Origin: Kudoa neothunni
Taxonomy: Eukaryota; Animalia; Cnidaria
Length of the DNA stretch: 64,000 nucleotides
Assembly: GCA_964304625.1 (NCBI GenBank)
Contig: OZ199839.1
Span: forward strand, 9,637,730-9,701,729
Reading direction: 5' to 3'
A program made the translations under genes and the position numbers. This document shows positions 16,648 to 64,000 of the stretch, piece after piece (within the stretch, counting starts at the first letter, position 1; every line of letters starts with the position of its first letter). Under the pieces are notes generated by a model. That model saw only the letters and a program-made list of their open reading frames with translations, did no database searches and had not been told where the DNA came from.

Positions 16648-19600
16648 ATGATAGGGCGAATCGTTTTGCATATATTAGGCCTCATTTCTATAAGTAATAA
16701 ATGAATTATTACTTTCACAACATTTACATCTCATTAGTTTTACATTCGATTGTTGGTTCTGCAGTTGAAATCGATAATAATATACTGAAATTAAGCTTCT
16801 CGAATCATGCGAATGAATATAGAATATCGTTAACAGGATACAGAATCGAAGACAGCCACCGGAAATGTTCACTTCAGTATTCCGATTCCACGACAGAACC
16901 ATCACTCAAAACTATTCCTAATTGTAATAGTATAACCGGAAAGCAAGATGAATCATCAAAAATGTGCATTTTCGATTGCAAAAAAGTCGATTTACAATTA
17001 GATGGAAACGAATTTAAGAAAATTAAATATGTAAGATGGTGCCAAGGTAAGGGTGAGACAGCTATAAAGACATGTCCTTATAAAAAAGTGTATAAACTCA
17101 AAGGTAATTGACAAATTAAACATTTATTATATAAAGTTAATAAGATATTTATCTAAAAAGCATATTGTCTGCGTTCAAGTTAAATAATGAATTCACTGTA
17201 TCGGTTAAAACAAAAATAAACGGCGAGTTTACGTCCACAATGGACGGTGTTCAGCAAACTACCGCGAGCTTAAATATTAAGTTTTATGAAAAAAATACGA
17301 TTAAGCTTTTGACAACACCTGTCATGACATCTTTCTTTGTGAAATTTACCGATATACTGCCAGAAATCCTCATAAACCCTATGAAACCTAAAGAAGATTG
17401 GTTTATTGCAATTGGATCGGTTGGAACAACTGGTGACAACAATTATTTTTATACAATAAAACTCCAAAACCCTGAACCGTCAAAAATGTGCTATTTTGGA
17501 ATAAAAAAAGTAGACGATTTTCATTTTTCCTCCTACTGCGCAAAAATGAAAACAGCAGGACCATGCCTTCAACCTTGTTATAAAGCCACATTATATTACA
17601 AGTCAAAGTTGGACTTCGCTCAAGTACTTGTAAAACGCCCCAATATGTTGACCACAAAAGAATTTATCCAGACAGTGACATGTATTCATCAACTATTTTA
17701 CAGATTTTAATTTTTGATTAGTTAAAGAGCACCAACCTACAGCTACTTCAGTGAAAAAAACACAAGCTACGTTCAACTTTTCTGATTTAAATAAAAACGA
17801 AGCTACTAACTCTGAAATCAGTGATGCTTTTATTGGGGAAATTAAGCTAATAAAGAAATATCATGGAATAAATTGCACTGGTGACGACGCCGTTTGTACA
17901 GAAAACTCTGATTGCAAACGTTTTTCTTCGAAAACCTTTGATTCACTTCTACCGCTGACAGAATACATATTAAAGGTTAAAATAACTGGAGTTCAAGTCT
18001 TTGACTCATATGAAGTAAATCATTATCATAAATACTTTTACTTCAAAACCAAAGGTATTCTTAATTGTGATAGTTGAACTTAAATTAAGTAGGAGATAAT
18101 TTCGAATCTCAAAAAGAAATTACACCAACGGTTGTCCAAGATCAACCTACCAGATTAAACTTATCTCCAAAAGGACTTTTTTCAGTTGGAACTAATGTGG
18201 ATGCGAAATGTGAACTTTATTACTCGACCTCTGGAAACGAAGAATCGAAATTTCCAGCCACATGCCTAATAAATGATGAAAAAAAATTTTGTTTCGATAC
18301 ATGCACAATTCCCTTTTCCATTATTAACCTTGATCCTAAAACAAGCTACAAAATAACGATCTGCTCGGAAGGTTATACATGCGAAGCAGATAGCAATGCG
18401 GTCGAAAGTAATTTAATATCCATTTAGTAACAATAATTACATTCAACAGCTAGCGGAATTTCTCTCTCGGTTTCTATATTTAATCATGATAATGATAAAT
18501 CTACAGCTACAATATCACCTACAAATGGAAACCTTGGGGATTCATGGGCTTATATTCTCATAGAAAAAACGTCTCTGAGGGAAGTAATTGATTGCTTGAA
18601 TAGTGTTTGCAGTCCTATTGTCACAGAAAGAGAAAGTAAGAAGATATTAGAATTTCCATGGACGATCATTATCGCAGAAGTTACGTACCAATTAGTTGTA
18701 ATAAATACAAATACTGCTAAACCCGTAACTCAATATATGGAAAGTAAAAATTATCAAATTTAATATATATAAAATATCCTAGGAGAGACTAAAGAACTTG
18801 ATGCTAAAATGATTATCAAATATGCTTCAAGCGAAATATATAAAATAAAATTTACAGGTGAGATCATTGGTGTAAGGGAAAAACAATGTACTGTTAAGAA
18901 GTCTGATGACGAATTAACTACTTATGAAAATATAAGCCAAGAGGGTGAAGTTACAAAAAGATGCAGTAATTTAGGGGAAGAGATTAATGCTAACATTAAT
19001 ATTCTAAATAAATATAAATACGTATCAGTCACTTATAATGATGAAAAAACCATAACTAAGAGTAACCCATCTAAATCCCGCATAAATCCTGAAATCTTGA
19101 AAACGTCAGGAGAACCGGACGATGAACATAAAATCGACCATGGACAGGGTGGTACACAGGATCTTACATCCAAAGGGAAAAATCAGCTGCCACAAATTGA
19201 AAAAGTTCTTTTTAAAAGAGGATATGTTTATGCTTATTATTTCGCAGGTAGTTTAATAATTTGGGAACAATCTAACTTTCTCTAGATCATTTTGAAGAAA
19301 TAGGAATGATCGCAACTATAACTGAAGATAAAATAAAAATAGGATCAAGTAAATGTTCAATGAATTGCAAAGCGCATAGAGACAGCCAAGAGCTTGGTGA
19401 TATAATAGAAAATGAGGCGAGATGTACTACATTTGGAAGTTATTCTATTCCAATTAGTGAAAATACTGAAGATTACTTTATCAGTTGTCCTGGATATTTT
19501 GATTTTCATTACTTTTACGATACCACCTTTACGAAAAAATATGCTCCAATATTCAGTAGATTTTATTATGAGCTGACTGTTAATGAAAATGAAAGAAAAC

Positions 19601-22600
19601 TCACCGTGAAATTAGTCAATGAGATGCCATCCGAAATATGCACTTTTGAATGGTTAGATGCAACCGATTCATCTTCAAACACATTCTTTTCAAACAGGTG
19701 TAAAAATAAGGGAAATTGTTTTCACACTATCTGTAGTAATATAACATTTGAAAATATACCAGCAGAAGTAAAGGCAGTTAAAATACGTGTCTTAAAATTA
19801 GGAATGGAACCAGTGATTGGTTACCAATCAAACGTCCACATTCGTAATATTCGTTATTATAAATTTGTTTTTTATTTATTAAATATAGTAAAACATGGAA
19901 GAGATATTCCCTTAAAAACAAAAGATAACAAAATAATAGTCGACCTTAATAATAAGAATAAGAATGAGGATGGTACAGAAGTTAACACACAACCTGTTCC
20001 ATCATGCTCTTTGAAGCACTGGAACGCCTACGCTCCGATTGAATCCATTAGTTTGATGGAATCCTTTACTAATCCACCTGGCTGTGAATTCGGTGAAGTT
20101 GGGCTCACACCTGATCCAACAGATTTACCTTATGTTGTAATGGTAATGATACATAATCTATCAAAATATTTTCCAAGAAAATATTTTTATCATAAATTAG
20201 GTAAACTATTTACTTTATTATGGTTTTTAATTTACTCGTAAGATCAAACGACGAATCTTTCAATTCAAGAAGATTCAGTCTCACCTACCGCAAGTGGATT
20301 CACACTTACTCCTGATACTTCACATTCAGCCATATGCAAAATTTATGTTAAAGAACATAATGCACCACATTTTTATCCTGCTATTTGCAACACGAACAAA
20401 TTATGTGTAGGTGCGTGTAACACAACGTTCACTATTATTGGGCTGTATTCAGGTGTCAACTATGATATAAAAATTGTGCCTAGCGGATCATACAAGGTTA
20501 AAACATTTGAGAACAAGAAAACAAGTAACCTTATTTTTCTATAATTTATTAAATGCTTAATAGTTGGAACTAATATTGAATTTAAAATATCTGAGGAGTC
20601 AAAGAAAAATAACCTGAAAATAACTTACACGAGAGAAATTGCTAATTCTGAAACTATTGATTGTTATTACCAGTTGTATAAACACGAAACCGATGAACGT
20701 AATAATATGGGTTTAATTCTTCTACAATATTTTAGGTTCGCCAACAATTATTCAAAAATCCTGCATTGAATGCAATACAGAGAGTCTTAAAAAGTGCAGT
20801 GATATTCAATTCGATGACAGCTTATATAATAACAAATATAACTACAGGCTGATGATTTATGCGAATGCACAGTCACCACCAGTGAAAATCGCGATTCCAG
20901 GTATAATAGTTATGAATTTTTGTATAAATGCCCTATAGCGTTTTCTCGACACGGAAAACTACAACAAAGTCACTTTAAAAATAATGATGGGGATGTTGAC
21001 AAATTCTCTGTTATACTCAAAGATTTTCCAGTTGAAAACAAATGCGTGATAAAATTATCAAGTTTTGCGGCAACACCTGAATTCAATAAACCAACTTGCA
21101 CGGGTAATACACATGGGAATTATTGCGTTATAGACTGTTCAACTTCTAATGAGGTTGAGATTGAATTATTGAATTCTAAAATTGATCGATATGTATTGGT
21201 TTGTTATGGTGAAGATGAAAATGAAGCAAAAGGATGCAATAAAAAGAATATTTTCCAAATTAAAATGGGTAATTTTATTAAACGCTATTTAATTTGTCCT
21301 TTAATTTTGTAATTATTTTTCTTAATAAATACTTTTGATTATAGAATATAAGCTGGAGAATACGTACAAAGTCACACATAATGATAATAAAGTTAATATT
21401 TCGTACAAGTCGAACTCAAAAACCGAGTGGAGTGTGGCTGCTGATGGAAAAATTGACACGTTTAATAACGATGCAAAAAACAGCTTACGAATTTTGTATT
21501 ATTCGTCAGCTTTGGAAGAAAAATCTGCTTCTTTCTCAGATGATAGGTTCATGAGTTACTATAAAATAGGTTCCACTCTTTTATGGCCTGGATTAATTTA
21601 TTACACTAATAACACGTACTTGATCAAAAACACTCCACTAAAATCTCAAATTATATTCAATATTTCATGCATTGCTGATAAACCTAACCAACTGAGAATA
21701 AACTTCTCGCCTGGACCTTATAATGACGAAATATGTCACATCAAGGTATTTGAGGTAAATTCAAACAATGCAAATGACACAGGCAATGTTCTTAATACAT
21801 GCAGAGATATAAAAGATGGATGCTATCAACTTTGTCAAGACGGTTTTATCAATTTGACGAAAGAATATCAAAAAGTTGGTGTAATTATTAAGCGAAGGTT
21901 CGATACAGACGAATATAAGCAATATCATAAAAGTAATTGAATCATTAATTTATGAAATTTACAATTGTTAGGGGGAGACACTGGTGTTAATTTATCCGCA
22001 GTTACTGCATCTGGAGTAACACTTACTGGACTTAATATCTACGAGAACATAAAAAATAAAGATGAAATTTCAGAATGCACCATTAAAATATCTAGAGCTA
22101 ATTCTGTCTCAAACGAAGAGATACCTATCTGTGATTCTAATAAAACCTCATGTTCTACTAACTGTCAAGCATCACACATGATTACTAATTTGGAAGCTGG
22201 TACAAATTATCTGTTATCGGTGGAGATTACGAATCTTGGTTTTCCTGGTAGTTACCTCAAGAAGATGGTGTTTAGAACCTGTAAATATTATATTATTTAT
22301 TTTATATCTAAAGCTAAATAGCGGAGGGAACTGAATTAACGCTAGCCGATTCAAAAGCTGTCATATCACCCAATACCGCTGCAATCACCCCATTCCGTGA
22401 TAATGATTTTCTTCCAATATGCAGAGTCTATCTTAACAAAGAAGGAGATTCGACTCAAAAATACATGGCAGTATGCAAAGATATGGGAGTCTGTGAGGGC
22501 AGCTGTTCCAACAATTTCGAAATAGTTAACCTAGCGCTAGAACAAAACTATACAGCTTTTGTGGTACCGTCTGATGGCAAGAAAGAAAGAACCTACAATA

Positions 22601-23521
22601 TTGAAGCAGGTATAAGTTATAAGCGGGTTTAATAAAACATATTTTAGTCAAAAGTAAATTAACAATTACATATACATCTAAAGAGGAGAGCGATTTAACA
22701 ATTTCTGTTCAAATTGATGGACAAAAAACTGGTTCAAAATGCCCATTTATGTTACACGAGAAAATGTTAAACGAACAGACAACATCACTAGCTACGTGGT
22801 GTAACGATGACGAGGATTGCTCAGCTAATCAATGTGTGATCAAAATTAACGGTCTTTCAAAGGAAAAAGACTACGTGCTAATGGTAAAAGCAAAGGATGT
22901 TACAACCTACAAACAGCATGAAATTCTATGTAAATTATATTTTTACATTCAAATTAAACGTTCATAAATTAATAATAATACTTATTGATTTATAAAGACA
23001 CTAAAGTTTCCAGGATGAGTGGGTAATTGAAATGAATTAATTTTTGTAAATTAATAATCTTTTAGTAACTTAATTATAATAATAAACTAAAACTAGTTAT
23101 GAATTGAAGAACAACAGATCAGAAGTGAATATACAAATATTGAGGTGGATGACATTGTTGGAAAAGTCATAAGAATGGCTCAAAAGGGGTATTCTATTCC
23201 ATTATAATATACATGTTTATGCTTATTCTAATTTAGTATTTCATTTTAATTACTACACCTTAAATCTTATAACTGGATAGATAGTACAGGTAAAGATAAG
23301 TATATAGTTGGAAAAAGTGAAAAAAAGTAAAAGAAATATAGAATTTCTTTTTAATTTTTTTTAGATACAATAACAGATACATGTAATATATAAATATGAC
23401 GGCGTATGTATCTACTATTTTTAGACTGTATTCGTTAACCACAATAATACTAACATTATTGGTAGTGATATGCTTCGGCATCTATAAAAAATTATCCACG
23501 GATGCTACTTACGACTTATGA
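16648..23521 (+). CDS. Copy A: ~1,930-aa Cys-rich, FN3-like-repeat type I membrane protein (21 predicted exons)
   Basis: Signal peptide MIGRIVLHILGLISI|ILHSIVGSA. A continuous frame can be spliced through 20 GT-AG introns. Repeated C..C..CxxxC plus I/LxxLxPxTxYxI modules. Last exon LYSLTTIILTLLVVICFGIYKKLSTDATYDL*. The last three junctions are less certain. Confidence 0.82.
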
Positions 23522-23755
23522 ATTATAATTACATACTAATTAACAGAATAGATTATGATTAGATGATATTAATTAGGGAAATATATTAGTTTTCGATTCA
23601 TCAATGTTGTGTTATTAGTTCATTTTAGAGTTATTTTATGATGTCAATAGGTAAATTTATCTCCGTAATTTAAAAAATTGGAGAAATAAAGATTTTTCTT
23701 TCGATAAAAGGTAAGGAAATATAAGTATTTTATTGTTTGCAGGTATTTGTCTCCT

Positions 23756-23811
23756 TTAACTCTCTGTATCCCTTCCTTTCGGAAGTGGGGTCCATAAGAG
23801 ACCTCACTTCC
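23756..23811 (+). mobile_element. Orphan piggyBac-like terminus with subterminal hairpin
   Basis: TTAA-CTCTCT followed by the imperfect palindrome GGAAGTGGGGTC..GACCTCACTTCC, which resembles the TGGGGTC..GACCCCA subterminal palindrome at 28081-28099. Confidence 0.45.
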
Positions 23812-24101
23812 ACTATTTATCGTGTTAGTTTGAAAGTAAGGATTGATATTTTGCAGTTCCAGGAACGCCTCTATCAGATGAAAAAGCTTTTATCAAACCT
23901 GTATTTTTCTGTCTAATATATAAAATACGCATAACATATAATAGTTCATTCCACGGGTATTTTTTTCTTATAGAATCTCAAAAAAGTCATTCATTACATA
24001 ATATCATATGAAAAAGTAACTATTTATATCGGATAAATATGATCACCTTCCAAAAACCATTGATATTATTATAAGATATAAGTTATAAATCATAATAATT
24101 A

Positions 24102-26216
24102 TAGGGTTTATCGATCTAACTCGATAATTTTAGTGTCAAAAAATCAATCCTAATTATTTCATAGCACATAATTATTTAGATTAAGAAATTGTCTCAAATT
24201 TTTGATCCATAAAACTGATAGACAAAAATACGTGTGTAGCAAAGAATGACGCCTTCTGTGTTTTAAAATTAAAATTATATCTTGAATAAGTGTTAAATTT
24301 TTAAATAAACATAAAATATGTTTTTAAGATAAAAAAATTAAAGGAAATGTAGTGGTCATGATATTTATTAAATTTTTCGTGGTGAACACACCAATATGAC
24401 AGCATTACATTGTTTTCTTAATAGAATGAAACAAATAAATCCAAGAGTAAATATTGTAACTTAATTTAACAAAGTTTTTATTCTGCACGGAACAATAATT
24501 GTTTAAATCGACACCTTAGGATAAATTTAACACAATTATTTGGTTTATTATAACCTCGTATATTTTATAACAATATATGGATATAATCGAATTAACTCAT
24601 TAATTTTTAATATTAATTATTTAAAAAATGTTATGGATAAGAAATTTCATCTTTGATGTAATATTTGCTACTTCCCAAAAAATAAACGATGAAGCAAACA
24701 ATTAGTAAAATTCAGAATGTTACTTATTTTATTATATAAAGCATAACATTTACAATTTTGATTAAATGCATGAATTTAATGATAAAACATAACATAAACA
24801 TAAAAAGGATGGACCATCATTGGGTATTTCTCAAACATGAAGGATTGGATTAGTTATTTTCCTTTAAAAAATTATCATTTATTTTTCAATAAAAATCCGA
24901 GTTTCTGATTATAATGTTGTATCAAGATTACAATTACCACATTATTTAACAAACTTGCCACGTTATCTGCTTTAAATAATATTAGTTATGGATCGTCACC
25001 ATGGTAATATTGAGAGCTTATCAGATTCAGATTCCTGTGAACATGAAATTTCTCTTGTTCAAATATCAACGCAGGAACAGAACCAATAACTAAGATTTTC
25101 ACGAGTAAAAAGGGGCAAATACATGGGTTTATTCTTTTGGAAATGAGCACTACTACAATTGCCTCCCAAATTAAGTTACCAAGGTCTACCATGACCACAA
25201 TAATTTCGAAGTTCTAAAAGACAGGAGTCATAGAACTGAAACCCAGAGGAGGCGACAAACGTTCTATTTTGTTATTAGACAGAGAGAAAAAATTATTTCA
25301 TGGATAGACGAAAACTCCATGATAAAGCTAAAGGAGCTCAAGCAAAAGGTTTTGGATGAATTAAATTTAAATGTGTCTATTAGCACCATAGATCAAGTGA
25401 TTGGTGAATTTCACTACACATTCGAAACTTTAGTGACCGTGTCTGAAAGGGGAAATTGTGAATCGACCTTGGAAAAAAGGAAAGAATACGCCGAAATTTT
25501 TCGAAATTTGGAAGTGTCGGTACGACATGAGAACATAATCTTTTTATATGAAGTTGGATTTGCAGTTGTTACGAGACCAAAGTGAGGTAGTTCTTAAAAG
25601 GCACATCTGCTTATGCCTTCGTCAGAGCCGCCCGAGCAGAAACATTTCTGTGGTTGCTGCCATTAATAAAAATTCCATGATTTACCACAAGATTCACGAC
25701 GAAGCTGTCACTGGTGACGATTTCAAACATCGTCTCGTCGAATTGAAGAACGTTTGCAGGGAAAAGATGATAGGAGACCTGTTATTCGCTACGAGTAATA
25801 CTAGAATACATCACTACAAAGACCTTGGAACTGTGATTTTGGAAGAAAATCTAAACATTAAATTTTTTCCCTCATAATCACCTTTTTTGAATCCGATTGT
25901 AAATGCATTTTCCGTCTGGGAAAATTTGGTGTTTAGAAGGCAGAGAAAAAATGAAAACGAATTGAAGATGGCAATATCAGAATGTTTTCAACAAATCACT
26001 CCTTCCCACTGCGATAATTTCTTTCGCAAAATGTTAGGATATCTTTCCAGATCGTCTCGGGGGAAGATAATTTTAGAATAAACAATATGTAGAATCATTA
26101 ACGATTTTTTTGAAAAATTTATTGATGTGTTTTTTGGTGGTCTATTTTGTATTGAGTTTGTTTGCAAAGAGGTCGAGTTAGGTTGCAAAAATATCGTACT
26201 AGATAGAAAAACCCTA
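24102..26216 (+). mobile_element. Tc1/IS630-family DNA transposon, inactive
   Basis: TA-flanked imperfect TIRs TAGGGTTTATCGATCTAACTCGATAATTTT / AAAATATCGTACTAGATAGAAAAACCCTA. Transposase fragments 25319-26081 (IIFLYEVGF, ATSNTRIHH, FPS*SPFLNPIV) show all three DDE positions substituted. Confidence 0.88.
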
Positions 26217-26236
26217 TAATATCAGTTTTTGTTTAA

Positions 26237-28145
26237 CCTTCCGTAGCACGTGGTTTTAATATCGCTGTAATAAGTTTTTGGTTTAAGCTAGTGACTCATA
26301 ATTAATTTCATTCGCATATTTTTTTTACAAAAATTATAGATATATCAGATATGAATTTTGAAAATTTTTTACATTGTGATAGCAGTGATACGTTTTCGTC
26401 GGATTCGGAGACATAGCTTTGACCCCTATTTGGATAACATACTATCAGAAAACAGTGATATATCTGATTCTGATATGTCAAAAGACATTAGCGATGATGA
26501 ATTGATTGATGACTGTTCAAACATTAATAATTAATAAGGAAACATTACATGGGAAGAATTATGAATGGTCGCCTAATCCAGTCGGTTTGTTCGGCAAAAA
26601 AAGAAAACATATTATTCAAGAAAAACATCAAATCAATCTTCCTGATAATGTTAATACGGAGTCTGAGATATGGAGCTTATTTATTATAGACGAAATACTG
26701 TAAGACATCCTACATTTTACAAATGACCAACTAAAAAAATACAAACTAATTTCAAACGAAAAAGAGATTGCGTTGAATTTAATTTATGTGAATTAAAAAC
26801 GTTTATAGGTTTACATTATTTTCTTGGCGTAAAAAAAGCTAATTTAACTAATATGAATGAACTCTGGGCAGATGATATCTTTGGATTTCCCATTTGCAAC
26901 AAAGTATTCGGCCAAAATAGATTTAAGTTATTGAAACGTTGTATACGTTTTACGAACGATTTGTCAATATCATTAGAGCCCTCTAATGATAGATCATTTA
27001 AAATTAGAGATGTTATTAGCCGCATAAAATCTAATTTCTTAAAATATTATACTCCAACCGAATATTTAACAATTGACGAAATGCTTTGGGGGTTCAGATG
27101 CAACTGTATTTTTAATCAATACATGCCTCTAAAACCTGAAAAATATGTTATAAACATCGTTAATACGGCTGATGCTAAAACATTTTATACCTTAAATGTT
27201 GAGGTATTCTTAGGGGCTCAAAATGTTGACATTCATAAAATTGACAACTCATCTAATGTTTAGTACTGCGATGGGTAGAATCGATTTTAGGTTCTGGTAG
27301 AAACATTACGGTAGATAAATGGTTTACCTCAGTTCCTCTCTTCGAAGCATTATTGAAACGTGGTATCACTGCATGTGGTACTATTAGAAAAAATAAAAAG
27401 GAGATTCCTTCGGAATTTCTATTTTCGAAGACAAAAGAGCTATATTCATCCATGTTCGACTTTACCAACGATTTTACGTTGCTGTCATACATACACTTCG
27501 AAAAAAACAAACTTGTCATATTATTGAGTTTTTTTCACCATAAACCAATAATAGATTCAAATCATCCCCAGAAACTTCCAGAAATGATTTCATTTTATAA
27601 TTCCATCAAGGGAGGTGGGGACACAATCGACCAAATGTGCGCCAATTATTCTACCTATCGAACTACCAGAAGATGACCAGCAGTAATATTTCATGCGCTC
27701 CTAGATGTAGTTTCAATAAATTCATATGTAATTTATTGATTAAACACGAAGGAAAATATTCGGAGAAAAGAATTCTTAAAATCGTTAGCATTACAATTGC
27801 TAGAGTAACAAATGAATCGCAAAAGTACAAATTAATTTATGTATTAATAATATTAATGTAGATGAGGCAAATATAAAAGAATATGACAAAATACCTACCG
27901 CTACAGATAGAAGACGATGTAAAATATATGTTAGGCAAAATGATCGTAAAACGCAATCAAAATGCAATATTTGTTGGGGAAATATTTGCAAAAAACATTA
28001 TAAAACTATAAGCGATAATTGTTTTGTTAAAAGATAATTATTTTATTGAATAAAACGTATTATTTTCATCATTTTCTTCGTGGGGTCTTTTAGACCCCAT
28101 GTGTGGACTCGCGTAGTAATTTTTGCGCGTACTCCATCCGGAAGG
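26237..28145 (+). mobile_element. piggyBac element, full-length but inactive
   Basis: TTAA TSDs at 26233-26236 and 28146-28149, CCTTCCG/CGGAAGG termini. Fragments LTIDEMLWGFR, YMPLKPEKY, ITVDKWFTS, GTIRKNK, YNSIKGGGDTIDQM and a C-terminal Cys-rich domain. Stops and frameshifts present. Confidence 0.92.
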
Positions 28146-54302: not shown

Positions 54303-54740
54303 TTTTTGTAAAAATATACATTTTTATATTTTCCGAATCTTACATAGTTTATTATTTTATATCATGTCACATATTGACTTAAAAAAGCTCTAAATAAAAT
54401 TAAAACTTTGCACCAGAAATTAATTTGCTTGGTCATATAACATTATCATTCTTTGTTTTTATAATTATTAAATAGAAAATAGGATTTGTTTAAATGATTC
54501 CAATTTTTGGTGATCTATACATTGGGCATCCGATTTTACACACTGTGGACCCTACGTAACATTTTTGTGTCTTTCACGTTGTTTATATTTTTAAACGCAT
54601 TTCTTTAGTAAGTTTTAAAACAAATTTTATTTTTTAAATTAAGTTAATCTACTTGAAAGTACGTAGAGTCCTTAGTGATGTAATTAGTGAGAGTGCCTCA
54701 TTGCGTTCCAACTGTACACGCATAAGATTTATATTGTTAA

Positions 54741-56636
54741 CCTTCCGGATGGAGTACGCGCAAAAATTACTACGCGAGTCCACACATGGGGTCTAAAAGA
54801 TCCCACGAAGAAAATGATGAAAATAATACGTTTTATTCAATAAAATAATTATCGTTTAACAAAACAATCATCGCTTATAGTTTTATAATGTTTTTTGCAA
54901 ATATTTCCCCAACAAACATTGCATTTTGATTGCGTTTTACGATCATTTTGCCTAACACATAAATGACATCGTCTTCTATCTGTAGCGGTAGGTATTTTGT
55001 CACATTCTTTTATTTTTGCCTCATCTACATTAATATTATTAATACATAAATTAATTTGTACTTTTGCGATTCATTTGTTACTCTAGCAATTGTAATGCTA
55101 ACGATTTTAAGAATTCTTTTCTCCGAATATTTTGCTTCGTATTTAAACAATAAATTACATATGAATTGATTGAAACTACATTTAGGAGCGCATGAAATAT
55201 TACTGCTGGTCATCTTCTGGTAGTTCGATAGGTAGAATAATTGGCGCACATTTGGTCGATTGTGTCCCCACCTCCCTTGATGGAATTATAAAATGAAATC
55301 ATTTCTGGGGATGATTTGAATCTATTATTGGTTTATGGTGAAAAAAACTCAATAATATGACAAGTTTGTTTTTTTTCGAAGTGTATGACAGCAATGTAAA
55401 ATCGTTGGTAAAATCGAACATGGATGAATATAGCTCTTTTGTCTTCGAAAATAGAAATTCCGAAGGAATCTCCTTTTTACTTTTTCTAATAGTACCACAT
55501 GCAGTGATACCACGTTTCAATAATTCTTCGAAGAGAGGAACTGAGGTAAACCATTTATCTACCGTAATGTTTCTACCAGAACCTAAAATCGGTTCTACCA
55601 ATCGCAGTACTAAACATTAGGTGAGTTGTCAATTTTATGAATGCCAATATTTTGAGCACCTAAGAATACCTCAATATTTAAGGTATAAAATGTTTTAGCA
55701 TCAGCCGTATTAACGATGTTTATGCCATATTTTGCAGGTTTTAGAGGCATGTATTGATTAAAAATACAGTTGCCTCTGAACCCCCAAAGCATTTCGTCAA
55801 TTGTTAAATATTCGGTTGGAGTATAATATTTTAAGAAATTAGATTTTATGCGGCTAATAACATCTCTAATTTTAAATGATCTATCATTAGAGGGCTCTAA
55901 TGATATTGACAAATCGTTCGTAAAACGTATACAACGTTTCAATAACTTAAATCTATTTTGGCCGAATACTTTGTTGCAAATGGGAAATCCAAAGATATCA
56001 TCTGCCCAGAGTTCATTCATATTAGTTAAATTAGCTTTTTTTACGCCAAGAAAATAATGTAAACCTATAAACGTTTTTAATTCACATAAATTAAATTCAA
56101 CGCAATCTCTTTTTCGTTTGAAATTAGTTTGTATTTTTTTAGTTGGTCATTTGTAAAATGTAGGATGTCTTACAGTATTTCGTCTATAATAAATAAGCTC
56201 CATATCTCAGACTCCGTATTAACATTATCAGGAAGATTGATTTGATGTTTTTCTTGAATAATATGTTTTCTTTTTTTGCCGAACAAACCGACTGGATTAG
56301 GCGACCATTCATAATTCTTCCCATGTAATGTTTCCTTATTAATTATTAATGTTTGAACAGTCATCAATCAATTCATCATCGCTAATGTCTTTTGACATAT
56401 CAGAATCAGATATATCACTGTTTTCTGATAGTATGTTATCCAAATAGGGGTCAAAGCTATGTCTCCGAATCCGACGAAAACGTATCACTGCTATCACAAT
56501 GTAAAAAATTTTCAAAATTCATATCTGATATATCTATAATTTTTGTAAAAAAAATATGCGAATGAAATTAATTATGAGTCACTAGCTTAAACCAAAAACT
56601 TATTACAGCGATATTAAAACCACGTGCTACGGAAGG
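54741..56636 (-). mobile_element. Mirror copy of the inactive piggyBac
   Basis: TTAA at 54737-54740 and 56637-56640. Transposase fragments show several substitutions relative to the arm-1 copy. Confidence 0.92.
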
Positions 56637-56656
56637 TTAAACAAAAACTGATATTA

Positions 56657-58772
56657 TAGGGTTTTTCTATCTAGTACGATATTTTTGCAACCTAACTCGA
56701 CCTCTTTGCAAACAAACTCAATACAAAATAGACCACCAAAAAACACATCAATAAATTTTTCAAAAAAATCGTTAATGATTCTACATATTGTTTATTCTAA
56801 AATTATCTTCCCCCGAGACGATCTGGAAAGATATCCTAACATTTTGCGAAAGAAATTATCGCAGTGGGAAGGAGTGATTTGTTGAAAACATTCTGATATT
56901 GCCATCTTCAATTCGTTTTCATTTTTTCTCTGCCTTCTAAACACCAAATTTTCCCAGACGGAAAATGCATTTACAATCGGATTCAAAAAAGGTGATTATG
57001 AGGGAAAAAATTTAATGTTTAGATTTTCTTCCAAAATCACAGTTCCAAGGTCTTTGTAGTGATGTATTCTAGTATTACTCGTAGCGAATAACAGGTCTCC
57101 TATCATCTTTTCCCTGCAAACGTTCTTCAATTCGACGAGACGATGTTTGAAATCGTCACCAGTGACAGCTTCGTCGTGAATCTTGTGGTAAATCATGGAA
57201 TTTTTATTAATGGCAGCAACCACAGAAATGTTTCTGCTCGGGACGACTCTGACGAAGGCATAAGCAGATGTGCCTTTTAAGAACTACCTCACTTTGGTCT
57301 CGTAACAACTGAAAATCCAACTTCATATAAAAAGATTATGTTCTCATGTCGTACCGACACTTCCAAATTTCGAAAAATGTCGGAGTATTCTTTCCTTTTT
57401 TCCAAGGTCGATTCACAATTTCCCCTTTCAGACACGGTCACTAAAGTTGTGAATGTGTAGTGAAATTCACCAATCACTCGATCTTTGATACTAATAGACA
57501 CATTTAAATTTAATTCATCCAAAACCTTTTGCTTGAGCTCCTTTAGCTTTATCATGGAGTTTTCGTCTATCCATGAAATAATTTTTTCTCTCTGTCTAAT
57601 AACAAAATAGAACGTTTGTCACCTCCTCTGGGTTTCAGTTCTATGACTCCTGTCTTTTAGAACTTCGAAATTATTGTGGTCATGGTAGACCTTGGTAACT
57701 TAATTTGGGAGGCAATTGTAGTAGTGCTCATTTCCAAAAGAATAAACCCATGTATTTGCCCCTTTTTACTCGTGAAAATCTTAGTTATTGGTTCTGTTCC
57801 TGCGTTGATATTTGAACAAGAGAAATTTCATGTTCACAGGAATCTGAATCTGATAAGCTCTCAATATTACCATGGTGACGATCCATAACTAATATTATTT
57901 AAAGTAGATAACGTGGCAAGTTTGTTAAATAATGTGGTAATTGTAATCTTGATACAACATTATAATCAGAAACTCGGATTTTTATTGAAAAATAAATGAT
58001 AATTTTTTAAAGGAAAATAACTAATCCAATCCTTCATGTTTGAGAAATACCCAATGATGGTCCATCCTTTTTATGTTTATGTTATGTTTTATCATTAAAT
58101 TCATGCATTTAATCAAAATTGTAAATGTTATGCTTTATATAATAAAATAAGTAACATTCTGAATTTTACTAATTGTTTGCTTCATCGTTTATTTTTTGGG
58201 AAGTAGCAAATATTACATCAAAGATGAAATTTCTTATCCATAACATTTTTTAAATAATTAATATTAAAAATTAATGAGTTAATTCGATTATATCCATATA
58301 TTGTTATAAAATATACGAGGTTATAATAAACCAAATAATTGTGTTAAATTTATCCTAAGGTGTCGATTTAAACAATTATTGTTCCGTGCAGAATAAAAAC
58401 TTTGTTAAATTAAGTTACAATATTTACTCTTGGATTTATTTGTTTCATTCTATTAAGAAAACAATGTAATGCTGTCATATTGGTGTGTTCACCACGAAAA
58501 ATTTAATAAATATCATGACCACTACATTTCCTTTAATTTTTTTATCTTAAAAACATATTTTATGTTTATTTAAAAATTTAACACTTATTCAAGATATAAT
58601 TTTAATTTTAAAACACAGAAGGCGTCATTCTTTGCTACACACGTATTTTTGTCTATTAGTTTTATGGATCAAAAATTTGAGACAATTTCTTAATCTAAAT
58701 AATTATGTGCTATGAAATAATTAGGATTGATTTTTTGACACTAAAATTATCGAGTTAGATCGATAAACCCTA
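56657..58772 (-). mobile_element. Mirror copy of the Tc1/IS630 element
   Basis: Reverse complement of 24102-26216, including TIRs. Confidence 0.88.
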
Positions 58773-59062
58773 TAATTATTATGATTTATAACTTATATCT
58801 TATAATAATATCAATGGTTTTTGGAAGGTGATCATATTTATCCGATATAAATAGTTACTTTTTCATATGATATTATGTAATGAATGACTTTTTTGAGATT
58901 CTATAAGAAAAAAATACCCGTGGAATGAACTATTATATGTTATGCGTATTTTATATATTAGACAGAAAAATACAGGTTTGATAAAAGCTTTTTCATCTGA
59001 TAGAGGCGTTCCTGGAACTGCAAAATATCAATCCTTACTTTCAAACTAACACGATAAATAGT

Positions 59063-59118
59063 GGAAGTGAGGTCTCTTATGGACCCCACTTCCGAAAGGA
59101 AGGGATACAGAGAGTTAA
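59063..59118 (-). mobile_element. Mirror copy of the orphan piggyBac-like terminus
   Basis: Reverse complement of 23756-23811. Confidence 0.45.
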
Positions 59119-59352
59119 AGGAGACAAATACCTGCAAACAATAAAATACTTATATTTCCTTACCTTTTATCGAAAGAAAAATCTTTATTTCTCCAATTTT
59201 TTAAATTACGGAGATAAATTTACCTATTGACATCATAAAATAACTCTAAAATGAACTAATAACACAACATTGATGAATCGAAAACTAATATATTTCCCTA
59301 ATTAATATCATCTAATCATAATCTATTCTGTTAATTAGTATGTAATTATAAT

Positions 59353-62300
59353 TCATAAGTCGTAAGTAGCATCCGTGGATAATTTTTTATAGATGCCGAA
59401 GCATATCACTACCAATAATGTTAGTATTATTGTGGTTAACGAATACAGTCTAAAAATAGTAGATACATACGCCGTCATATTTATATATTACATATATCTA
59501 TTAACGTATCTAAAAAAAATATTACAAATAAATTCTGTATTTCTTTTACTTTTTTTTCACTTTTTCCAACTATATACTTATCTTTACCTGTACTATCTAT
59601 CCAGTTATAAGATTTAAGGTGTAGTAATTAAAATGAAATACTAAATTAGAATAAGCATAAACATGTATATTATAATGGAATAGAATACCCCTTTTGAGCC
59701 ATTCTTATGACTTTTCCAACAATGTCATCCACCTCAATATTTGTATATTCACTTCTGATCTGTTGTTCTTCAATTCATAACTAGTTTTAGTTTATTATTA
59801 TAATTAAGTTACTAAAAGATTATTAATTTACAAAAATTAATTCATTTCAATTACCCACTCATCCTGGAAACTTTAGTGTCTTTATAAATCAATAAGTATT
59901 ATTATTAATTCATACACTTTTTATTTGAATGTAAAAAAATAATTTACACTGAATTTCATGTTTTTTATAGGTTGTAACATCCTTCACTTTTACCATTAGC
60001 ACGTAGTCTTTTTCCTTTGAAAGACCGTTAATTTTGATCACACATTGATTAGCTGAGCAATCCTCGTCATCGTTACACCACGTAGCTAGTGATGTTGTCT
60101 GTTCGTTTAACGTTTTCTCGTGTAACAATAAGGGGCATTTTGAATCATTTTTTTGTCCATCGATTTGAATAGAAATTGTTAGGTCGCTCTTCTCTTTAGA
60201 TGTATATGTAATCGTTAAATTACTTTTCACTAAAATATGTTTTATTAAATCCTAATAAACTTATAACAGCTTCAATATCGTAGGTTTTTTCTCTCTTGCC
60301 ATCAGATGGTACCAAAAAAACTGTATAGTTTTGTTCTAGCGCTAGGTTAACAAGTTCGAAATTGGTGGAACAACTGCCCTCACAGACTCCCATATCTTTG
60401 CACACTGCCATGTATTTCGGATGTGGATCTCCCTCTTTTTTAAGGTAGACCCTATAGATTGGAAGAGAATCATCATCATGGAATGGGGTGATTGTAGCGG
60501 TATTGGGTGATATGACAGCTAGAGTATTGCTCTCAGTCAATTCACTCCCTCCTGCTATTTAATTTTAGATATAAAATAAATATTATATAGTTACAGGTTC
60601 TAAATATCATCTTCTTAATATAAGTTCCAGTAATTCCAAGATTCTTAATTTCCACTGATAACAAATAATTTGTACCGGCTTCTAATTCAGCAATCGTGTA
60701 TGACGCTTGACAGTTAGTAGAGCATTTATTGTTATTAGGACTACAAGTAGCTATCTCTTCGTTTGAGATATAATTAGCCTTAGATATTTTAATAGTGCAT
60801 TCTGGAGCTGTATCTGCATGCTTAATGCTTTCAAAGATATTAAGCCGAGTGAGTGTTATTTCTGACGCAGTAACTGCAGATAAATTAACGCCGGTATCAC
60901 CCACTAAAATATATAAATTTCTAATATTAATTATTTTATTACTTTTATGGTATTGTTTGTATTCTGCTACGTCAAATCTTCGCTTTATAATTACACCAAC
61001 TTTTTGATATTCCTCCGCTAAATTGATAAATCCATCTTGACATAGTTGATAGCAACCATCTTGTATATCCCCACACGCGTTTAGAGCAGTATCTACTTTA
61101 TCTGAGCCATCTGAATTTACTTTAAATACCTTGATGTGACACATTTCATCATTGTAAGGGCCAGGAGAAAAGTTCAATTGAAGTTGGTTTCTTTTATTCG
61201 CGATACTTGAAACTGAATATATAACATGGGATTTTATTGGAATGCTACAGTTGAGGAAAGTAGTATTGGTATAATATATTATTCCAGGCCATATTAATGT
61301 TGAAGTTATTTTGTAATAACTCATGAATTTGTCGATCGAGAAAGCAACGGACTTCGTTTCGACGTTGTTAGAATAATCTGATTTATTCAACGAATTTTTT
61401 TGTGGAACACTTGATGAATCACTTTTCAAGTCAGTACTCACTTCCCATTCAGTTTTGGAGTTCGACTTATACGATAAACTAACCTTATTTCCAGTATGTC
61501 TAATTCTATATGTGTTTTCCAGTCGATAATCTGTGTAAAAATGTATAAATAAAATAATAATTTCCATATTTTTTAAAATATAATGTATGAAAAATACCCA
61601 TTTTAATTGGGAAAACCGACCTATTTTTCCACGATTTTGCATCATCATCATTTGAACCATAACAAACTGATATATATCGGTCAATTTTTGAATTTAAATA
61701 ATCAATCTCAACGGGACCAGACGTCTGACAATTAACAATGCAGTAATCTCTATTTGTGATAGTAAAGCAAACTGGTTTATTGAATATAGGTGTTTCACCA
61801 AAACTTGATAATTTTATCACGCATTTGCTGCTTTCGGGGAAATTTGTAAGTAAAACGGAGAATTTCTCAATATCTTCACCATTTGCGGTAACAAATTTTT
61901 GCTGAAGTTTACCATGCCTGGAAAAAGCTAAAAATATATATTAACTAACGTATGACGAAATTTGTGATACCTGGAATAGGGAGTTTAACGGGTGATGACT
62001 TTCTATCCGCGTATATCATTAGTCTGTAATTGTACTTATTACTATACGAATTTGCATCGAATTGGATATCATTGCAGTTTTTAAGACCATCTACAGTACA
62101 TTCAACGCATGATTTTTGTATATTTGTTGGTGAAACTACATTAAATAAATAATATAACGCGAGATAAAGAATTACATTCATCTGTTTCATGTTTATATAA
62201 CTGATAATAACACTTAGTACTAGCGGCATCCTGAATATCAGATTTAGGAGTTATTATAAGATTATTCTTTGTAGTCTCTCCAGAAATTCCAAAATCAATT

Positions 62301-62656
62301 TTATTGCCATCTATTATAAATGTGTTAAATTTAGATAAATTATATCACTTGTTTGCTTGTTCAGCACTTCTAAAACATTATAATTTCCACTGGGTACAAT
62401 TTTAATATCGTAGCTAACGCCAGAGTAAAGTCCAATAAGGTTAACCGGTGTGTTGCAAGTGTTTACACACAATACATCGTTGGTACATATAGCTGGATAA
62501 TAAACATTCTTTGAATCATTATTTTTTACGTAGATAGTGCAGGTGGCTGAGGACGCGGATGTGCTAGGAGTGAAAGAAAATCCATCTGCAGTCGGTGTAA
62601 CCCCTACTTCTCCAGTTGAAAGTGTTGATGATTGAGCTGTATAAAGTTTATTACAA

Positions 62657-62691
<35 letters not shown>

Positions 62692-64000
62692 TAATGAATA
62701 CTTGTTTTGTGATAAAAAAATTTTCTTGGAGAATAACCTGGTATATTTGTTATTTTTATCATAATATCATTATGTAAATGAGTTGGATTCGGTGCTATAT
62801 CCATCTCAGCGAAAACACAGGATGAAGGGTTAGTAACAGCTTTCCTTTCATCTTCATTTACCAATGGAGCATACACATTCCAATAGGTCAACGAACATGA
62901 CACAACTGGTGTGCCGCTAACTTCTCCACCATCTGCATTTTTATTATTAGCGCTAATATCAATTTTTATGTTGTTGCCTGATGTTATCACAGTTACATCA
63001 TTTCCATGCTTCACTAAATAATAGAATTATGATTTTGTATAAGATTAATATATTACATATGTAGATATTGTTTTGGTAGCCAACAGTAGGTAGCATTCCC
63101 AGCTTTAAGACACGAATTTTGACTGCTTTTACGCTGTCTGAGATATTTTCAAAAGTCACATTATTACACATACTGTATAAACAGTTTCCTTTATTTTCAC
63201 AAGTATTAGAAAAAAAATTATTTGAAGAAGACGCGGTTGCGTCTAACAATTCAAACGTACAAATCTCAGATGGGCTTTTATTTACCAATTTTATTGTAAG
63301 CTTTTTATTTTCAACATTGGATAATTCGTAATAAAATCTACTAAAAACTGGTGCATTGTTCTTAACAAATTCGTTGTCGTAAAAATAATGGAAGTCGAAA
63401 TGTTGTGGGCAGCTGATATAATAATCTTTAACTAATTCATCGAATTGAATTGAGTAGCTGCCAAAATCAGAACATGAATCAACCTCATTTTGTGGTATTC
63501 TGTTCTGTTCTAGATTGTCTTTGTATACTTTGCAATTTAACGAACACTTATTAGATCCCAATTTTATGTTATCTTTATAAAGTGATGCGATGTAAGTTAT
63601 TTCCTCATAATCATCTTTAAAGAATTATATCTATATATCAACTATGAATTACCTATGAAGTACGAATAAACTTTTCCATTTCTGAATTGGACCGTTTGTT
63701 TGGTTGCTCCTGCTGGCTCTGGTGGTTTTTCAACAACGCTTTCGGTTACCTCTTCCCCTTCTGTAGGTTTATGAGGTTCGGATGATGAAGGAACATCGAT
63801 TTCCTTAGAATCTTCGTAAGTATAAGAAATATAATTAAGCTTATGATAATTATAAAGGCTAATGACGGACTCTTCATTTAGTGTGCTGCATTGTTTTTGA
63901 AATACGGAGTTGCTTTCTCCGACATCTTCATAACCTAATAAATCATTTTTGGACCTTTTTATTGTACATTGTTTCTTATTTGCCTCTGAAGGGATATCTT
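59353..64000 (-). CDS. Copy D (most divergent paralog); 5' part lies beyond the window
   Basis: Exon 7 to the end is homologous to A/B/C, with open frames where checked. The terminal exons are nearly identical to A (tail KKLSTDATYDL*). Confidence 0.8.
62661..62688. repeat. (TA)n microsatellite in an intron of D
   Basis: Direct observation. Confidence 0.9.

What the first reader, a model, noticed from the sequence alone, without database searches (positions are those of the whole stretch)
16648..64000. Candidate variant-surface-protein system: four giant Cys-rich FN3-like membrane protein genes in a palindromic locus
Seen: four paralogs (A+, B-, C+, D-) of a ~1,900-aa protein with a signal peptide, about 15 or more Cys-rich modules, one TM helix and an 11-aa tail. 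I do not recognise the family, and it has no cytoplasmic catalytic domain. The copies are mosaics and carry a hypervariable insert. Known: Cys-rich single-TM families with a conserved short tail (Giardia VSP) and segmental gene conversion (trypanosome VSG, Babesia ves, Borrelia vlsE) underlie antigenic variation. Inference: a diversifying surface antigen, adhesin or allorecognition locus in a compact-genome animal, probably a parasite.
Basis: partly seen in the sequence, partly recalled or inferred. Interest (0 to 1): 0.87.

Follow-up and report, generated by a model that had tools for sequence, protein, structure and literature searches.

The report
Giant FN3-array surface-protein gene family
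The four genes are real local members of an undescribed family of about 65 giant membrane proteins in a tuna muscle parasite (Kudoa neothunni); the copies swap segments with one another, but nothing yet shows that the parasite uses them to change its surface and evade immunity.

Summary
The window lies in a 40.26-Mb, 30% GC genome whose statistics match the published Kudoa neothunni assembly. It holds four paralogous genes with 37-45-nt introns. Each encodes a signal peptide, about 18 disulfide-braced FN3-like modules, a stalk, one TM helix and an 11-residue tail.

- **Gene state:** A and C look intact; C gives 1,955 aa under a nested-intron reading of its 3' end, unconfirmed without RNA. B carries frameshifts and is probably a pseudogene. 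D is cut at the window end, where a 200-N run follows.
- **Palindrome:** it is real but narrower than stated, about 22.5-38.6 kb against 60.4-44.2 kb. Non-coding parts are 99-100% identical; B/C coding parts are patchy at 60-100%.
- **Mosaicism:** C carries A-identical tracts (p<0.0005).
- **Family:** about 65 collinear genes on all three chromosomes, median 49% aa identity. About 40% of the 23 sampled look decayed.
- **Homology:** no Pfam hit above threshold, and only 20 fragmentary hits among 1.84 billion proteins.

The antigenic-variation reading is not supported. dN/dS is 0.25-0.38 with no window above 1, the paralogs are old, and no RNA data were usable. I favour a surface coat or adhesion repertoire. 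Other windows of this scan had already noted the family.

The parts
16701..23521 (+). Gene A, apparently intact. 15 large exons (1,892 aa), then small stalk exons and the TM/tail exon at 23425-23521.
   Evidence: Splice-aware model. All 14 introns lie at family-conserved positions and no block is missing. TM exon located.
30531..37374 (-). Gene B, probable pseudogene. Collinear with C but has frame-breaking 1-nt indels in exons 3-9. TM/tail exon at 30531-30627.
   Evidence: Three-frame reading shows repeated frame changes. Indels against C are listed, for example +1 T at 34290 creating a TAA stop, -1 G at 33822, and one at 35663. Five non-conserved pseudo-introns are needed to model it.
45396..52302 (+). 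Gene C, apparently intact. Signal-peptide mini-exon 45396-45438, 15 module exons, stalk exons, TM/tail exon 52206-52302. Under a nested-intron reading of the 3' end the CDS is 5,868 nt (1,955 aa) with no internal stop.
   Evidence: Contigs built from raw reads cover 46500-52400.
59353..64000 (-). Gene D, 3' two thirds only (exon 7 onward). TM/tail exon at 59353-59449. The gene is cut at the window end, where a 200-N run follows.
   Evidence: 1,212 aa partial model. Searches show the N run at G000:C2:9701730-9701929 and no hit to residues 1-662 of C in the 9 kb beyond it.
22500..38599 (.). Palindrome arm 1: the 3' end of A, the transposon-bearing intergenic region, all of B and its 1.2-kb 5' flank.
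   Evidence: Self-BLAST and arm alignment in 300-nt windows. Non-coding parts are 99-100% identical to arm 2; B/C coding parts are 60-100%.
44177..60400 (.). Palindrome arm 2, the reverse complement of arm 1: the 5' flank of C, all of C, the transposon-bearing intergenic region, and the 3' end of D.
38600..44176 (.). Unique 5.6-kb spacer between the head-to-head genes B and C. It holds a 1.6-kb element bounded by 227-nt inverted repeats (40674-40900 and 42076-42296).
48617..48855 (+). A-type conversion tract in C: 65 consecutive informative sites where A equals C and differs from B. A-C identity is 97-99% here, against 68-90% for B-C.
   Evidence: permutation p<0.0005.
49347..49673 (+). Second A-type tract in C: 38 consecutive A=C sites. 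A-C identity is 99-100%.
47786..47996 (+). Hypervariable Cys-free linker at the end of exon 7 of C (about aa 716-786). The counterpart in A lies near 19050-19210. It is unalignable between copies and 32-118 aa long across the family.
26727..27673 (+). Decayed piggyBac-type transposase (DDE_Tnp_1_7) in two broken frames, between the convergent genes A and B. The mirror copy lies at 55302-56146 (-) between C and D.
   Evidence: (E 1.6e-30 and 1.1e-21).

Best explanation
The locus is a local cluster of a Kudoa-lineage multigene family of about 65 collinear genes.

Shown:
- Each gene encodes a giant type-I membrane protein. The order is signal peptide, three copies of a five-exon super-unit (about 18 FN3-like beta-sandwich modules, most braced by four conserved cysteines), a disordered hypervariable hinge after module 7, a roughly 50-aa stalk, one TM helix, and an 11-residue tail with the family consensus [KR][KR]xSx[DE]xxY[DE]L-COOH.
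- The cluster evolves by segmental duplication (here a roughly 16-kb inverted duplication), by short gene-conversion tracts of 240-330 nt between neighbours, and by pseudogenisation (B).

Inferred:
- The proteins are delivered to the parasite plasma membrane by the shared TM and tail.
- They form a rod-like surface coat or adhesion layer at the parasite-host or parasite cell-cell interface.
- The roughly 50%-divergent ectodomains supply different binding or antigenic surfaces, used in different stages or cells.
- Switching of expression between copies has not been shown.
For: Gene structure and protein architecture.

Fold:
- Last module: AF2 pLDDT 80. Nearly all of the top 50 VIA-align matches are FN3 domains, Z 7.9-9.2; the FN3 rows in the top 20 align 81-88 residues at 2.3-3.3 A rmsd.
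- Central 195-aa domain: two tandem beta-sandwiches. The best ESM Atlas match is an IL-17-receptor-like FN3 pair, TM 0.56.

Super-repeat: profile-profile matches are strong for e5/e9/e15 (97-98%), e14/e15 (96%), e2/e12 (91%) and e3/e8a (89%), and weaker for e4/e14 (45%).

Family size and census:
- 127, 70 and 68 genomic matches for central, N-terminal and C-terminal exons. They pair about 6 kb apart at about 62-66 loci on all three chromosomes.
- 16 conserved intron positions. Of the 23 genes modelled, 8 are clean and about 10 are decayed.
- Pairwise identity is 44-73% (median 49%), with conserved exon lengths and about 60 conserved Cys columns.
- The tail is conserved in C1 paralogs.

Evolution:
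- Palindrome and mosaic tracts.
- Local clades in the tree.
- Purifying selection, omega 0.25-0.38.

Lineage restriction:
- No Pfam family above threshold in any C exon; the best is fn3 at 15.7 bits against a cutoff of 25.
- 20 fragmentary unnamed hits in 1.84e9 representatives.
- No PDB sequence relative.
- No paper in the searched library links Kudoa to FN3 or to such a family.
Against: - No transcript, protein or localisation data exist. Splicing of the small 3' exons that lead to the TM exon is unresolved: in-frame GT-AG paths exist, but several are possible.
- Surface location rests only on signal peptide plus TM topology.
- The census covers 23 of about 65 genes, and 'decayed' is judged from model irregularities.
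- The assembly came from low-coverage HiFi data of an infected host (PMC12239612), and 200-N runs flank the cluster. Some copy-level detail could therefore be wrong.
- An FN3 fold says nothing about the ligand.
Confidence: 0.6

Rival explanations
1. A true antigenic-variation system. One or a few family members are expressed at a time on the plasmodium or pre-sporogonic stages. Switching and segmental conversion from silent copies, including pseudogenes such as B, renew the exposed surface and evade fish antibody.
For: - Large collinear family with a conserved anchor and tail and uniformly diverged ectodomains.
- About 40% apparently decayed copies.
- Conversion tracts and a B/C pair whose non-coding DNA is 99-100% identical while coding patches fall to 60-75%.
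- A hypervariable hinge.
- Frequent inverted gene pairs.
- Antigenic change during development has been reported for some myxozoans, with the mechanism unknown (preprint 10.64898/2026.02.11.705288).
Against: - Omega is 0.25-0.38 with no window above 1.
- The paralogs are old (dS about 1).
- No donor above 79% identity exists for the divergent patches.
- The family is only about 2-fold enriched within 1 Mb of chromosome ends, by my count.
- No expression-site-like structure was seen.
- Kudoa plasmodia grow inside muscle fibres, which lowers exposure to antibody (background knowledge).
- No RNA evidence either way.
Confidence: 0.2
2. A self/non-self or cell-cell recognition code. Homophilic or heterophilic FN3-array receptors would be used between parasite cells (primary and secondary cells, fusing plasmodia), analogous to the cnidarian Alr families or to Dscam and protocadherin.
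For: - The organism is a cnidarian.
- Clustered single-pass beta-sandwich receptors with short tails.
- Purifying selection on old, distinct paralogs fits a fixed code.
Against: - No sequence or domain-type link to Alr proteins, which use Ig-like rather than FN3 domains.
- The 11-residue tail has no signalling motif that I can recognise.
- No polymorphism data exist.
- A high pseudogene fraction is unusual for a required code.
Confidence: 0.1
3. The palindrome and the apparent four copies are partly an assembly artefact, for example two haplotypes or reads joined in inverted orientation in a low-coverage HiFi assembly.
For: - The assembly derives from limited parasite coverage in host data, and haplotypic duplication had to be purged (PMC12239612).
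- A 200-N run cuts D right at the window end, and a second lies 4.7 kb further on.
- The arm non-coding parts are 99-100% identical over about 7 kb.
Against: - The window holds no N, and the arms are joined through a unique 5.6-kb spacer.
- A and D differ by 25-45% over most of their length, and B and C by up to 40% in patches. That is too much for alleles.
- Contigs built from raw reads of run X1 include both a C-specific piece (47758-48005, 0 mismatches) and a piece carrying a 3-nt insertion at the place where B has 3 extra nt relative to C (record 6).
- Inverted pairs recur at other family loci.
Confidence: 0.05
4. A diverged orthologue group of a known conserved metazoan FN3 receptor (for example RPTP/CD45-like, cytokine-receptor-like or sidekick/usherin-like) that has lost its cytoplasmic domain.
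For: - Structural matches include CD45 d3-d4, cytokine receptors and integrin beta4 FN3 domains at Z 8-9.
- An IL-17-receptor-like pair matches the central domain.
Against: - These are generic FN3 matches at 6-17% identity, all within about 1 Z unit of each other.
- No Pfam, PDB-sequence or 1.84e9-protein profile hit to any named receptor.
- A 65-fold expansion with an 11-residue tail has no counterpart in those families.
Confidence: 0.05

Closest known systems
Giardia variant-specific surface proteins (VSPs), and the VSP-like genes reported in the myxozoan Sphaerospora molnari
   Same: A large family of type-I proteins with signal peptide, disulfide-rich ectodomain, single TM helix and a very short conserved C-terminal tail. 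The setting is a parasite.
   Different: - VSPs have more than 10% Cys with many CXXC motifs; the S. molnari preprint gives 300-700-aa ectodomains and a [KR]X[KR]XK[KR] C-terminal motif. The CRGKA tail of Giardia VSPs is from background knowledge.
- Here Cys is 3.4% with one CXXC motif.
- Here there are about 18 FN3 modules in about 1,950 aa, and the tail is [KR][KR]xSx[DE]xxY[DE]L.
- No exon scan returned a VSP family.
- Mutually exclusive expression is untested here.
Apicomplexan 6-Cys (s48/45, e.g. 14-domain Pfs230) and Toxoplasma SRS families
   Same: Parasite surface families built from tandem disulfide-braced beta-sandwich modules. Some members are giant, and they are used for adhesion and host interaction rather than classical switching.
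   Different: They use a different fold class (SRS/s48/45 rather than FN3) and are mostly GPI-anchored or secreted. There is no sequence similarity, and none appeared among the structural matches.
Ciliate variable surface antigens (Paramecium and Tetrahymena i-antigens, Ichthyophthirius i-antigens)
   Same: Very large surface proteins with periodic cysteines and internal repeats, encoded by multigene families.
   Different: They are GPI-anchored, have a different repeat type, and show demonstrated mutually exclusive expression. This comparison rests on background knowledge and was not tested here.
Metazoan FN3-array receptors (CD45/RPTPs, cytokine receptors, integrin beta4, sidekick) and cnidarian Alr allorecognition genes
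   Same: FN3 or Ig-type beta-sandwich ectodomains on a single-pass protein. The Alr genes are also clustered multigene families in a cnidarian.
   Different: Here there is no catalytic or signalling cytoplasmic domain and no detectable sequence homology. Nearly every module carries a four-Cys brace, and the family has about 65 near-collinear copies with pseudogenes.

Membership tests
Fibronectin type III (FN3) fold | Seven-strand beta-sandwich of about 90-100 aa with FN3 topology | tested here: met
   AF2 model of the last module: pLDDT 79.9, seven strands. Nearly all of the top 50 VIA-align matches are FN3 domains, Z 7.9-9.2. Foldseek top hits are also FN3 or Ig, at E 4e-3 to 2e-2.
Pfam fn3 (PF00041) sequence family | Score above the gathering threshold (25 bits) | tested here: not met
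   Only exon 5 gives a sub-threshold hit, 15.7 bits at E 0.018. The other 14 exons give nothing relevant.
Giardia-type VSP | At least 5-10% Cys with multiple CXXC motifs | tested here: not met
   Cys is 3.4%, with one CXXC and no CXC in A and in C.
Giardia-type VSP | Conserved CRGKA-type, or basic [KR]x[KR]xK[KR], C-terminal motif | tested here: not met
   The tail is KKLSTDATYDL or KKFSKDTAYEL; the family consensus ends in Y[DE]L.
Giardia-type VSP | Signal peptide, single TM helix and short cytoplasmic tail | tested here: met
Antigenic-variation system (VSG, vlsE, var or VSP type) | Mutually exclusive or switching expression of family members | not testable with these tools
   No parasite reads in three RNA runs. 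The genome paper reports that very few host RNA reads map to the parasite.
Antigenic-variation system (VSG, vlsE, var or VSP type) | Segmental gene conversion creating mosaic genes | tested here: met
   A-type tracts in C of 65 and 38 consecutive informative sites, p<0.0005. Patchy B/C identity within 99-100% identical flanks.
Antigenic-variation system (VSG, vlsE, var or VSP type) | Diversifying selection on exposed parts (dN/dS above 1) | tested here: not met
   Pairwise omega is 0.25-0.38; the maximum in any 60-codon window is 0.81. Site-level tests were not run.
6-Cys / SRS surface families | s48/45 or SRS beta-sandwich fold with its Cys pattern | tested here: not met
   No such structure appears among the listed Foldseek or VIA-align matches for either model.

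The most novel reading that the evidence does not exclude
An animal parasite (a cnidarian) runs a protozoan-style variant-surface system. One of about 65 giant FN3-array coat proteins would be displayed at a time. New mosaics would be made by short conversion tracts from neighbouring copies and pseudogenes, helped by inverted-repeat (palindromic) gene pairs.
Probability: 0.2. Interest if true: 0.9.

Novelty: new variant of a known kind. Interest (0 to 1): 0.6.

Why it matters
**Scale.** Myxozoan genomes are drastically reduced; the K. neothunni annotation predicts about 5,300 proteins. Yet this one keeps about 65 genes of about 1,900 codons each. That is roughly 0.37 Mb of coding sequence, about 1% of the genome. 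As a rough estimate from the published median protein length, it is some 6% of coding capacity. Such an investment points to a central role at the host interface or in parasite cell organisation.

**Not yet described.** The family is absent from the genome paper, which has no mention of 'surface' or 'gene famil', and from every paper I could search.

**Practical uses.**
- It gives concrete candidates for Kudoa surface antigens. This is relevant to fish-muscle disease, post-mortem myoliquefaction and diagnostics.
- It provides a test bed for whether antigenic variation exists in a metazoan parasite.
- It offers a clean example of gene conversion within inverted gene pairs.

Tried and rejected
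**Searches that found nothing useful**
- Pfam on all 15 module exons of C: nothing above threshold.
- The search for homologous proteins with exon 13: no hit.
- ESM Atlas by sequence features for the central domain: best score 0.80, which is chance level.
- PDB sequence profiles for A1 and A2: nothing significant.
- A recent donor for the divergent B patch (34790-35650) and C patch (47140-48040): best matches elsewhere in the genome are only 79%. This argues against very recent import from an extant copy.

**RNA and read evidence**
- RNA runs X10-X12 carry the host's species label and held no parasite reads. This is no test of expression.
- Read-contig depth was too noisy to give copy number.

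**Methods that failed**
- Frameshift counting by tblastn junctions was too noisy because HSPs run into the 40-nt introns. I replaced it with an intron-position conservation census.
- A regex model of the 3' nested introns worked only for C. A relaxed path search found in-frame GT-AG routes to the TM stop for A, B and D. The exon choices it made are not trustworthy; in A the route removes part of the TM helix. For C the search ended at the wrong stop.
The census therefore covers 23 genes.

**Readings rejected**
- The upstream 1.2 kb of C is not a dispersed repeat. It is shared only with the neighbouring family genes: 98% with B's flank, 85% with the flank of the next gene beyond D, and 63-71% with A's flank.
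- An alternative genetic code was rejected. Canonical GT-AG mini-introns explain all frame breaks in A and C.

**Spliced proteins.** Those searches were made exon by exon, by reference. Joined models were used only inside local scripts for alignment, dN/dS and the tree.
Full report
**1. Organism and gene structure**

The window is AT-rich (about 30% GC) and contains no N. Stop-to-stop frames of 70-320 codons follow each other at gaps of 10-40 nt. The gaps are GT-AG mini-introns of 37-45 nt with GTA...TAG ends; 38 of them were collected.

The window is G000:C2:9637730-9701729. The assembly has 40,260,978 bases in 4 contigs, and C2 is 12,040,071 bases long. These figures match the Kudoa neothunni assembly obtained from yellowfin-tuna HiFi and Hi-C data. 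That assembly is 40.2 Mb with N50 12.0 Mb, three chromosomes plus a mitochondrial genome, 30.4% GC, median intron 49 bp and QV 48.5 (PMC12239612). I did not check rRNA or cox1 myself.

**2. The four genes**

A splice-aware dynamic-programming model was trained on the locus's own codons and splice sites. It gives:
- A (+): 15 large exons, 1,892 aa.
- C (+): a 43-nt signal-peptide exon plus 15 exons, 1,891 aa.
- D (-): a 1,212-aa partial model that runs off the window.
- B (-): a model that needs odd introns of 25, 26, 204, 94 and 113 nt.

Downstream of each gene lies a 97-nt exon encoding LYS + TM helix + an 11-residue tail. The tail reads KKLSTDATYDL in A and D, and KKFSKDTAYEL in B and C. The coordinates are 23425-23521, 30531-30627, 52206-52302 and 59353-59449.

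For C, a reading with two nested introns gives a 5,868-nt CDS (1,955 aa) without internal stop. Relaxed searches also find in-frame GT-AG routes for A, B and D, but the small-exon boundaries cannot be fixed without RNA.

Where the first mini-exon is captured, the N-termini are classic signal peptides, with a hydrophobic core of KD 2-3 followed by a conserved (D/E)NIDNN motif.

**3. B and D are not intact copies**

B changes frame repeatedly in exons 5-8. Aligned to C, it has 1-nt indels inside exons in contexts of 92-100% identity. Examples are TT to TTT at 34290, which creates a TAA stop, and GGG to GG at 33822. One further indel at 36729 lies in an A8/A9 run and could be a sequencing error. 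Short-run indels are not typical HiFi errors, so B is most likely a pseudogene.

D ends at the window edge. The next 200 bases of the chromosome are N, and a second 200-N run follows 4.7 kb later. I read these as scaffold gaps, although the tool also shows withheld stretches as N. No match to residues 1-662 of C lies beyond the first run.

**4. The palindrome**

Self-BLAST and a MAFFT alignment of the arms show that about 22.5-38.6 kb is the reverse complement of about 60.4-44.2 kb, around a unique 5.6-kb spacer.

The intergenic parts carry a decayed piggyBac-type transposase and a weak Tc1-like fragment. They are 96-100% identical between the arms, mostly 99-100%. The B and C coding parts range from 60% to 100% in patches.

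A and D resemble each other (90-100%) only from about 22.5 kb onward, that is in their last module, stalk and TM exons. Elsewhere they are 55-75% identical. The locus is therefore a roughly 16-kb inverted duplication, or an inverted homogenisation, that ends inside two older paralogs.

**5. Mosaicism**

In the A/B/C triplet, 1,175 informative sites group B with C, and 349 group A with C. The A=C sites are clustered:
- 65 consecutive sites at 48617-48855.
- 38 consecutive sites at 49347-49673.
- Patchier runs at 47254-47808.

The longest run beats all 2,000 permutations. In the windows covering the two long tracts A and C are 97-100% identical, against 73-88% in the adjacent windows. These are therefore recent A-C conversions.

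The strongly divergent middle of B, and its counterpart in C, have no close donor anywhere in the genome. The best match is 79%, to the next family gene beyond D. Old divergence with partial homogenisation of the flanks is thus at least as likely as recent import.

**6. What the protein is**

No exon of C reaches a Pfam threshold. The best result is fn3 at 15.7 bits for exon 5.

An AF2 model of the last module was built on 23 paralogs (pLDDT 79.9, pTM 0.69). It is a seven-strand sandwich, and nearly all of its top 50 VIA-align matches are FN3 domains, including fibronectin, integrin beta4, CD45 d3-d4 and cytokine receptors. Z is 7.9-9.2; the FN3 rows in the top 20 align 81-88 residues at 2.3-3.3 A rmsd.

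The central 195-aa domain (pLDDT 65.8) folds as two tandem sandwiches. The best PDB matches are tandem sandwich or Ig pairs at E about 3e-4. The best Atlas match is an IL-17-receptor-like FN3 pair, TM 0.56 over 168 residues.

Profile-profile comparison of exon alignments links several exon sets, though support is uneven:
- e5/e9/e15 at 97-98%.
- e14/e15 at 96%.
- e2/e12 at 91%.
- e3/e8a at 89%.
- e4/e14 at 45%.
- e8a/e13 and e6/e10-11 at only 6-8%.

This is consistent with three copies of a five-exon unit.

Cys content is 3.4%, about 60 Cys columns are conserved across the family, and there is one CXXC motif.

At the end of exon 7 sits a Cys-free linker rich in K, S, G, E, T and P. It is 32-118 aa long and cannot be aligned between paralogs.

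**7. The family**

Genome-wide six-frame searches give 127 matches for the central exon, 70 for the N-terminal exon and 68 for the last module. The N- and C-terminal matches pair about 6 kb apart at about 62-66 loci on all three chromosomes. A more distant subfamily of at least 10 loci has 21-27% identity.

I modelled 20 loci from chromosome 1 plus A, B and C:
- 16 intron positions are conserved.
- 8 genes are clean and 4-5 are nearly clean.
- About 10 need several non-conserved pseudo-introns or lack blocks.

Pairwise identity among the good models is 44-73% (median 49%). It is spread evenly over the ectodomain (45-64% per exon), apart from the exon-7 linker at 39%. Exon lengths are almost invariant.

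Paralog tails read, for example, RKNSKEISYDL, KKKSKDYSYEL and RRNSSDDTYEL.

A tree groups genes by location. Inverted pairs, both head-to-head and tail-to-tail, recur at other family loci. Identical scores at regular spacing suggest recent segmental duplications.

**8. Outside this genome**

A profile of the central domain, searched against 1.84 billion representative proteins, finds 20 hits. All are short unnamed ORFs from Logan or ENA assemblies. Two scaffolds from one metagenome are 52-67% identical to D; others are about 30% identical. No named homologue, PDB relative or Atlas cluster was found.

**9. Selection and expression**

Nei-Gojobori dN/dS is 0.38 for A-C, 0.27 for A-D and 0.25 for C-D. 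No 60-codon window exceeds 0.81. dS for A-D and C-D is about 1.

Contigs built from raw reads of the source sample cover all of 46500-52400. They include a C-specific piece, and a piece carrying a 3-nt insertion at the place where B has 3 extra nt relative to C. The three RNA runs tried held no parasite reads. The genome paper also reports almost no parasite RNA.

**10. Interpretation**

The anatomy and evolutionary dynamics are well supported. The function is inferred. The uniform rod-like FN3 architecture, the shared anchor and tail, and purifying selection on old, evenly diverged paralogs fit a repertoire of surface coat or adhesion proteins with differential use. Conversion tracts, pseudogenes and inverted pairs are compatible with a variant-antigen system but do not demonstrate one. 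The Giardia-VSP criteria are not met.

**11. Literature and earlier scan notes**

The literature I could search describes VSP-like, RIFIN/STEVOR-like and ETRAMP-like genes in Sphaerospora molnari. It describes nothing like this family in Kudoa.

Other windows of this scan had already noted members of the same family, its nested introns and its super-repeat. My own tests agree with those notes on family size, super-repeat, mosaic C and the hypervariable linker.

**12. Procedure**

Those searches were made exon by exon, by reference. Joined models were used only in local scripts.

Noticed in passing
window 51706-52205 (C); counterparts in A 22930-23424, B 31131-30628, D 59947-59450: The last FN3 exon is linked to the TM exon through 3-4 tiny exons and introns of 68-150 nt, in a genome whose introns are otherwise 37-45 nt. 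In C, an in-frame product requires, or at least allows, two introns nested in the donor of another intron (inner introns 51799-51841 and 51965-52007). In A and D the first outer acceptor reads TTG instead of TAG, so a plain 103-nt intron must be used there.
   Followed up: partly
window 48608-48652 (C) and the same place in A (~19844-19888): A 45-nt GTAAT...ATAG intron is in frame and free of stops, so it can be read through as 15 extra residues. In most other paralogs the same position is an ordinary intron.
   Followed up: partly
G000:C2:9701730-9701929 and 9706614-9706813 (just beyond the window end; L022 731-930 and 5615-5814): Two 200-N runs lie 4.7 kb apart. The first cuts gene D in its exon 7. 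The piece between them has no family exons.
   Followed up: partly
window 40674-40900 and 42076-42296: A 227-nt inverted repeat pair (88% identical) bounds a 1.6-kb stretch in the palindrome spacer. It may be a foldback or MITE-like element.
   Followed up: no
window 25175-25874 (+) and mirror 56999-57618 (-): Weak Tc1/mariner-like HTH and DDE_3 matches (E about 4e-3) lie next to the decayed piggyBac-type transposase. Another fragment of the piggyBac-type element lies upstream of the next family gene (L022 6079-6582).
   Followed up: partly
window 198-1202 (-): A single-exon cytosolic malate-dehydrogenase-like ORF of 334 aa. Other scan notes flag an unusual substrate-specifying residue.
   Followed up: no
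window 4956-5670 (+): Short exons with RCC1-repeat-like sequences (for example a ...CGxxHSFILT... motif) suggest an RCC1-domain gene upstream of the cluster.
   Followed up: no
L015-L020 (e.g. G000:C3:10508768, C3:8747134, C1:12680454, C3:256002): A second, distant subfamily of at least 10 loci shares the central two-sandwich domain at 21-27% identity, with all nine core cysteines conserved.
   Followed up: partly
G000:C3:9016200/9038509 (N-terminal exons) and 9022124/9044440/9067420 (last modules); C2:6207421/6245351; C1:16173880/16195659: Family members with identical match scores sit at regular spacing of about 22 kb or 38 kb. This suggests very recent tandem segmental duplications, or unpurged haplotypic duplication.
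   Followed up: no
L021 (SRR31175926 contig, 23% GC) and L044 (ERZ28624939 scaffold): Relatives from other samples carry long uninterrupted frames across positions where K. neothunni has conserved introns. This implies intron loss or gain within the family's lineage, or cDNA origin.
   Followed up: partly
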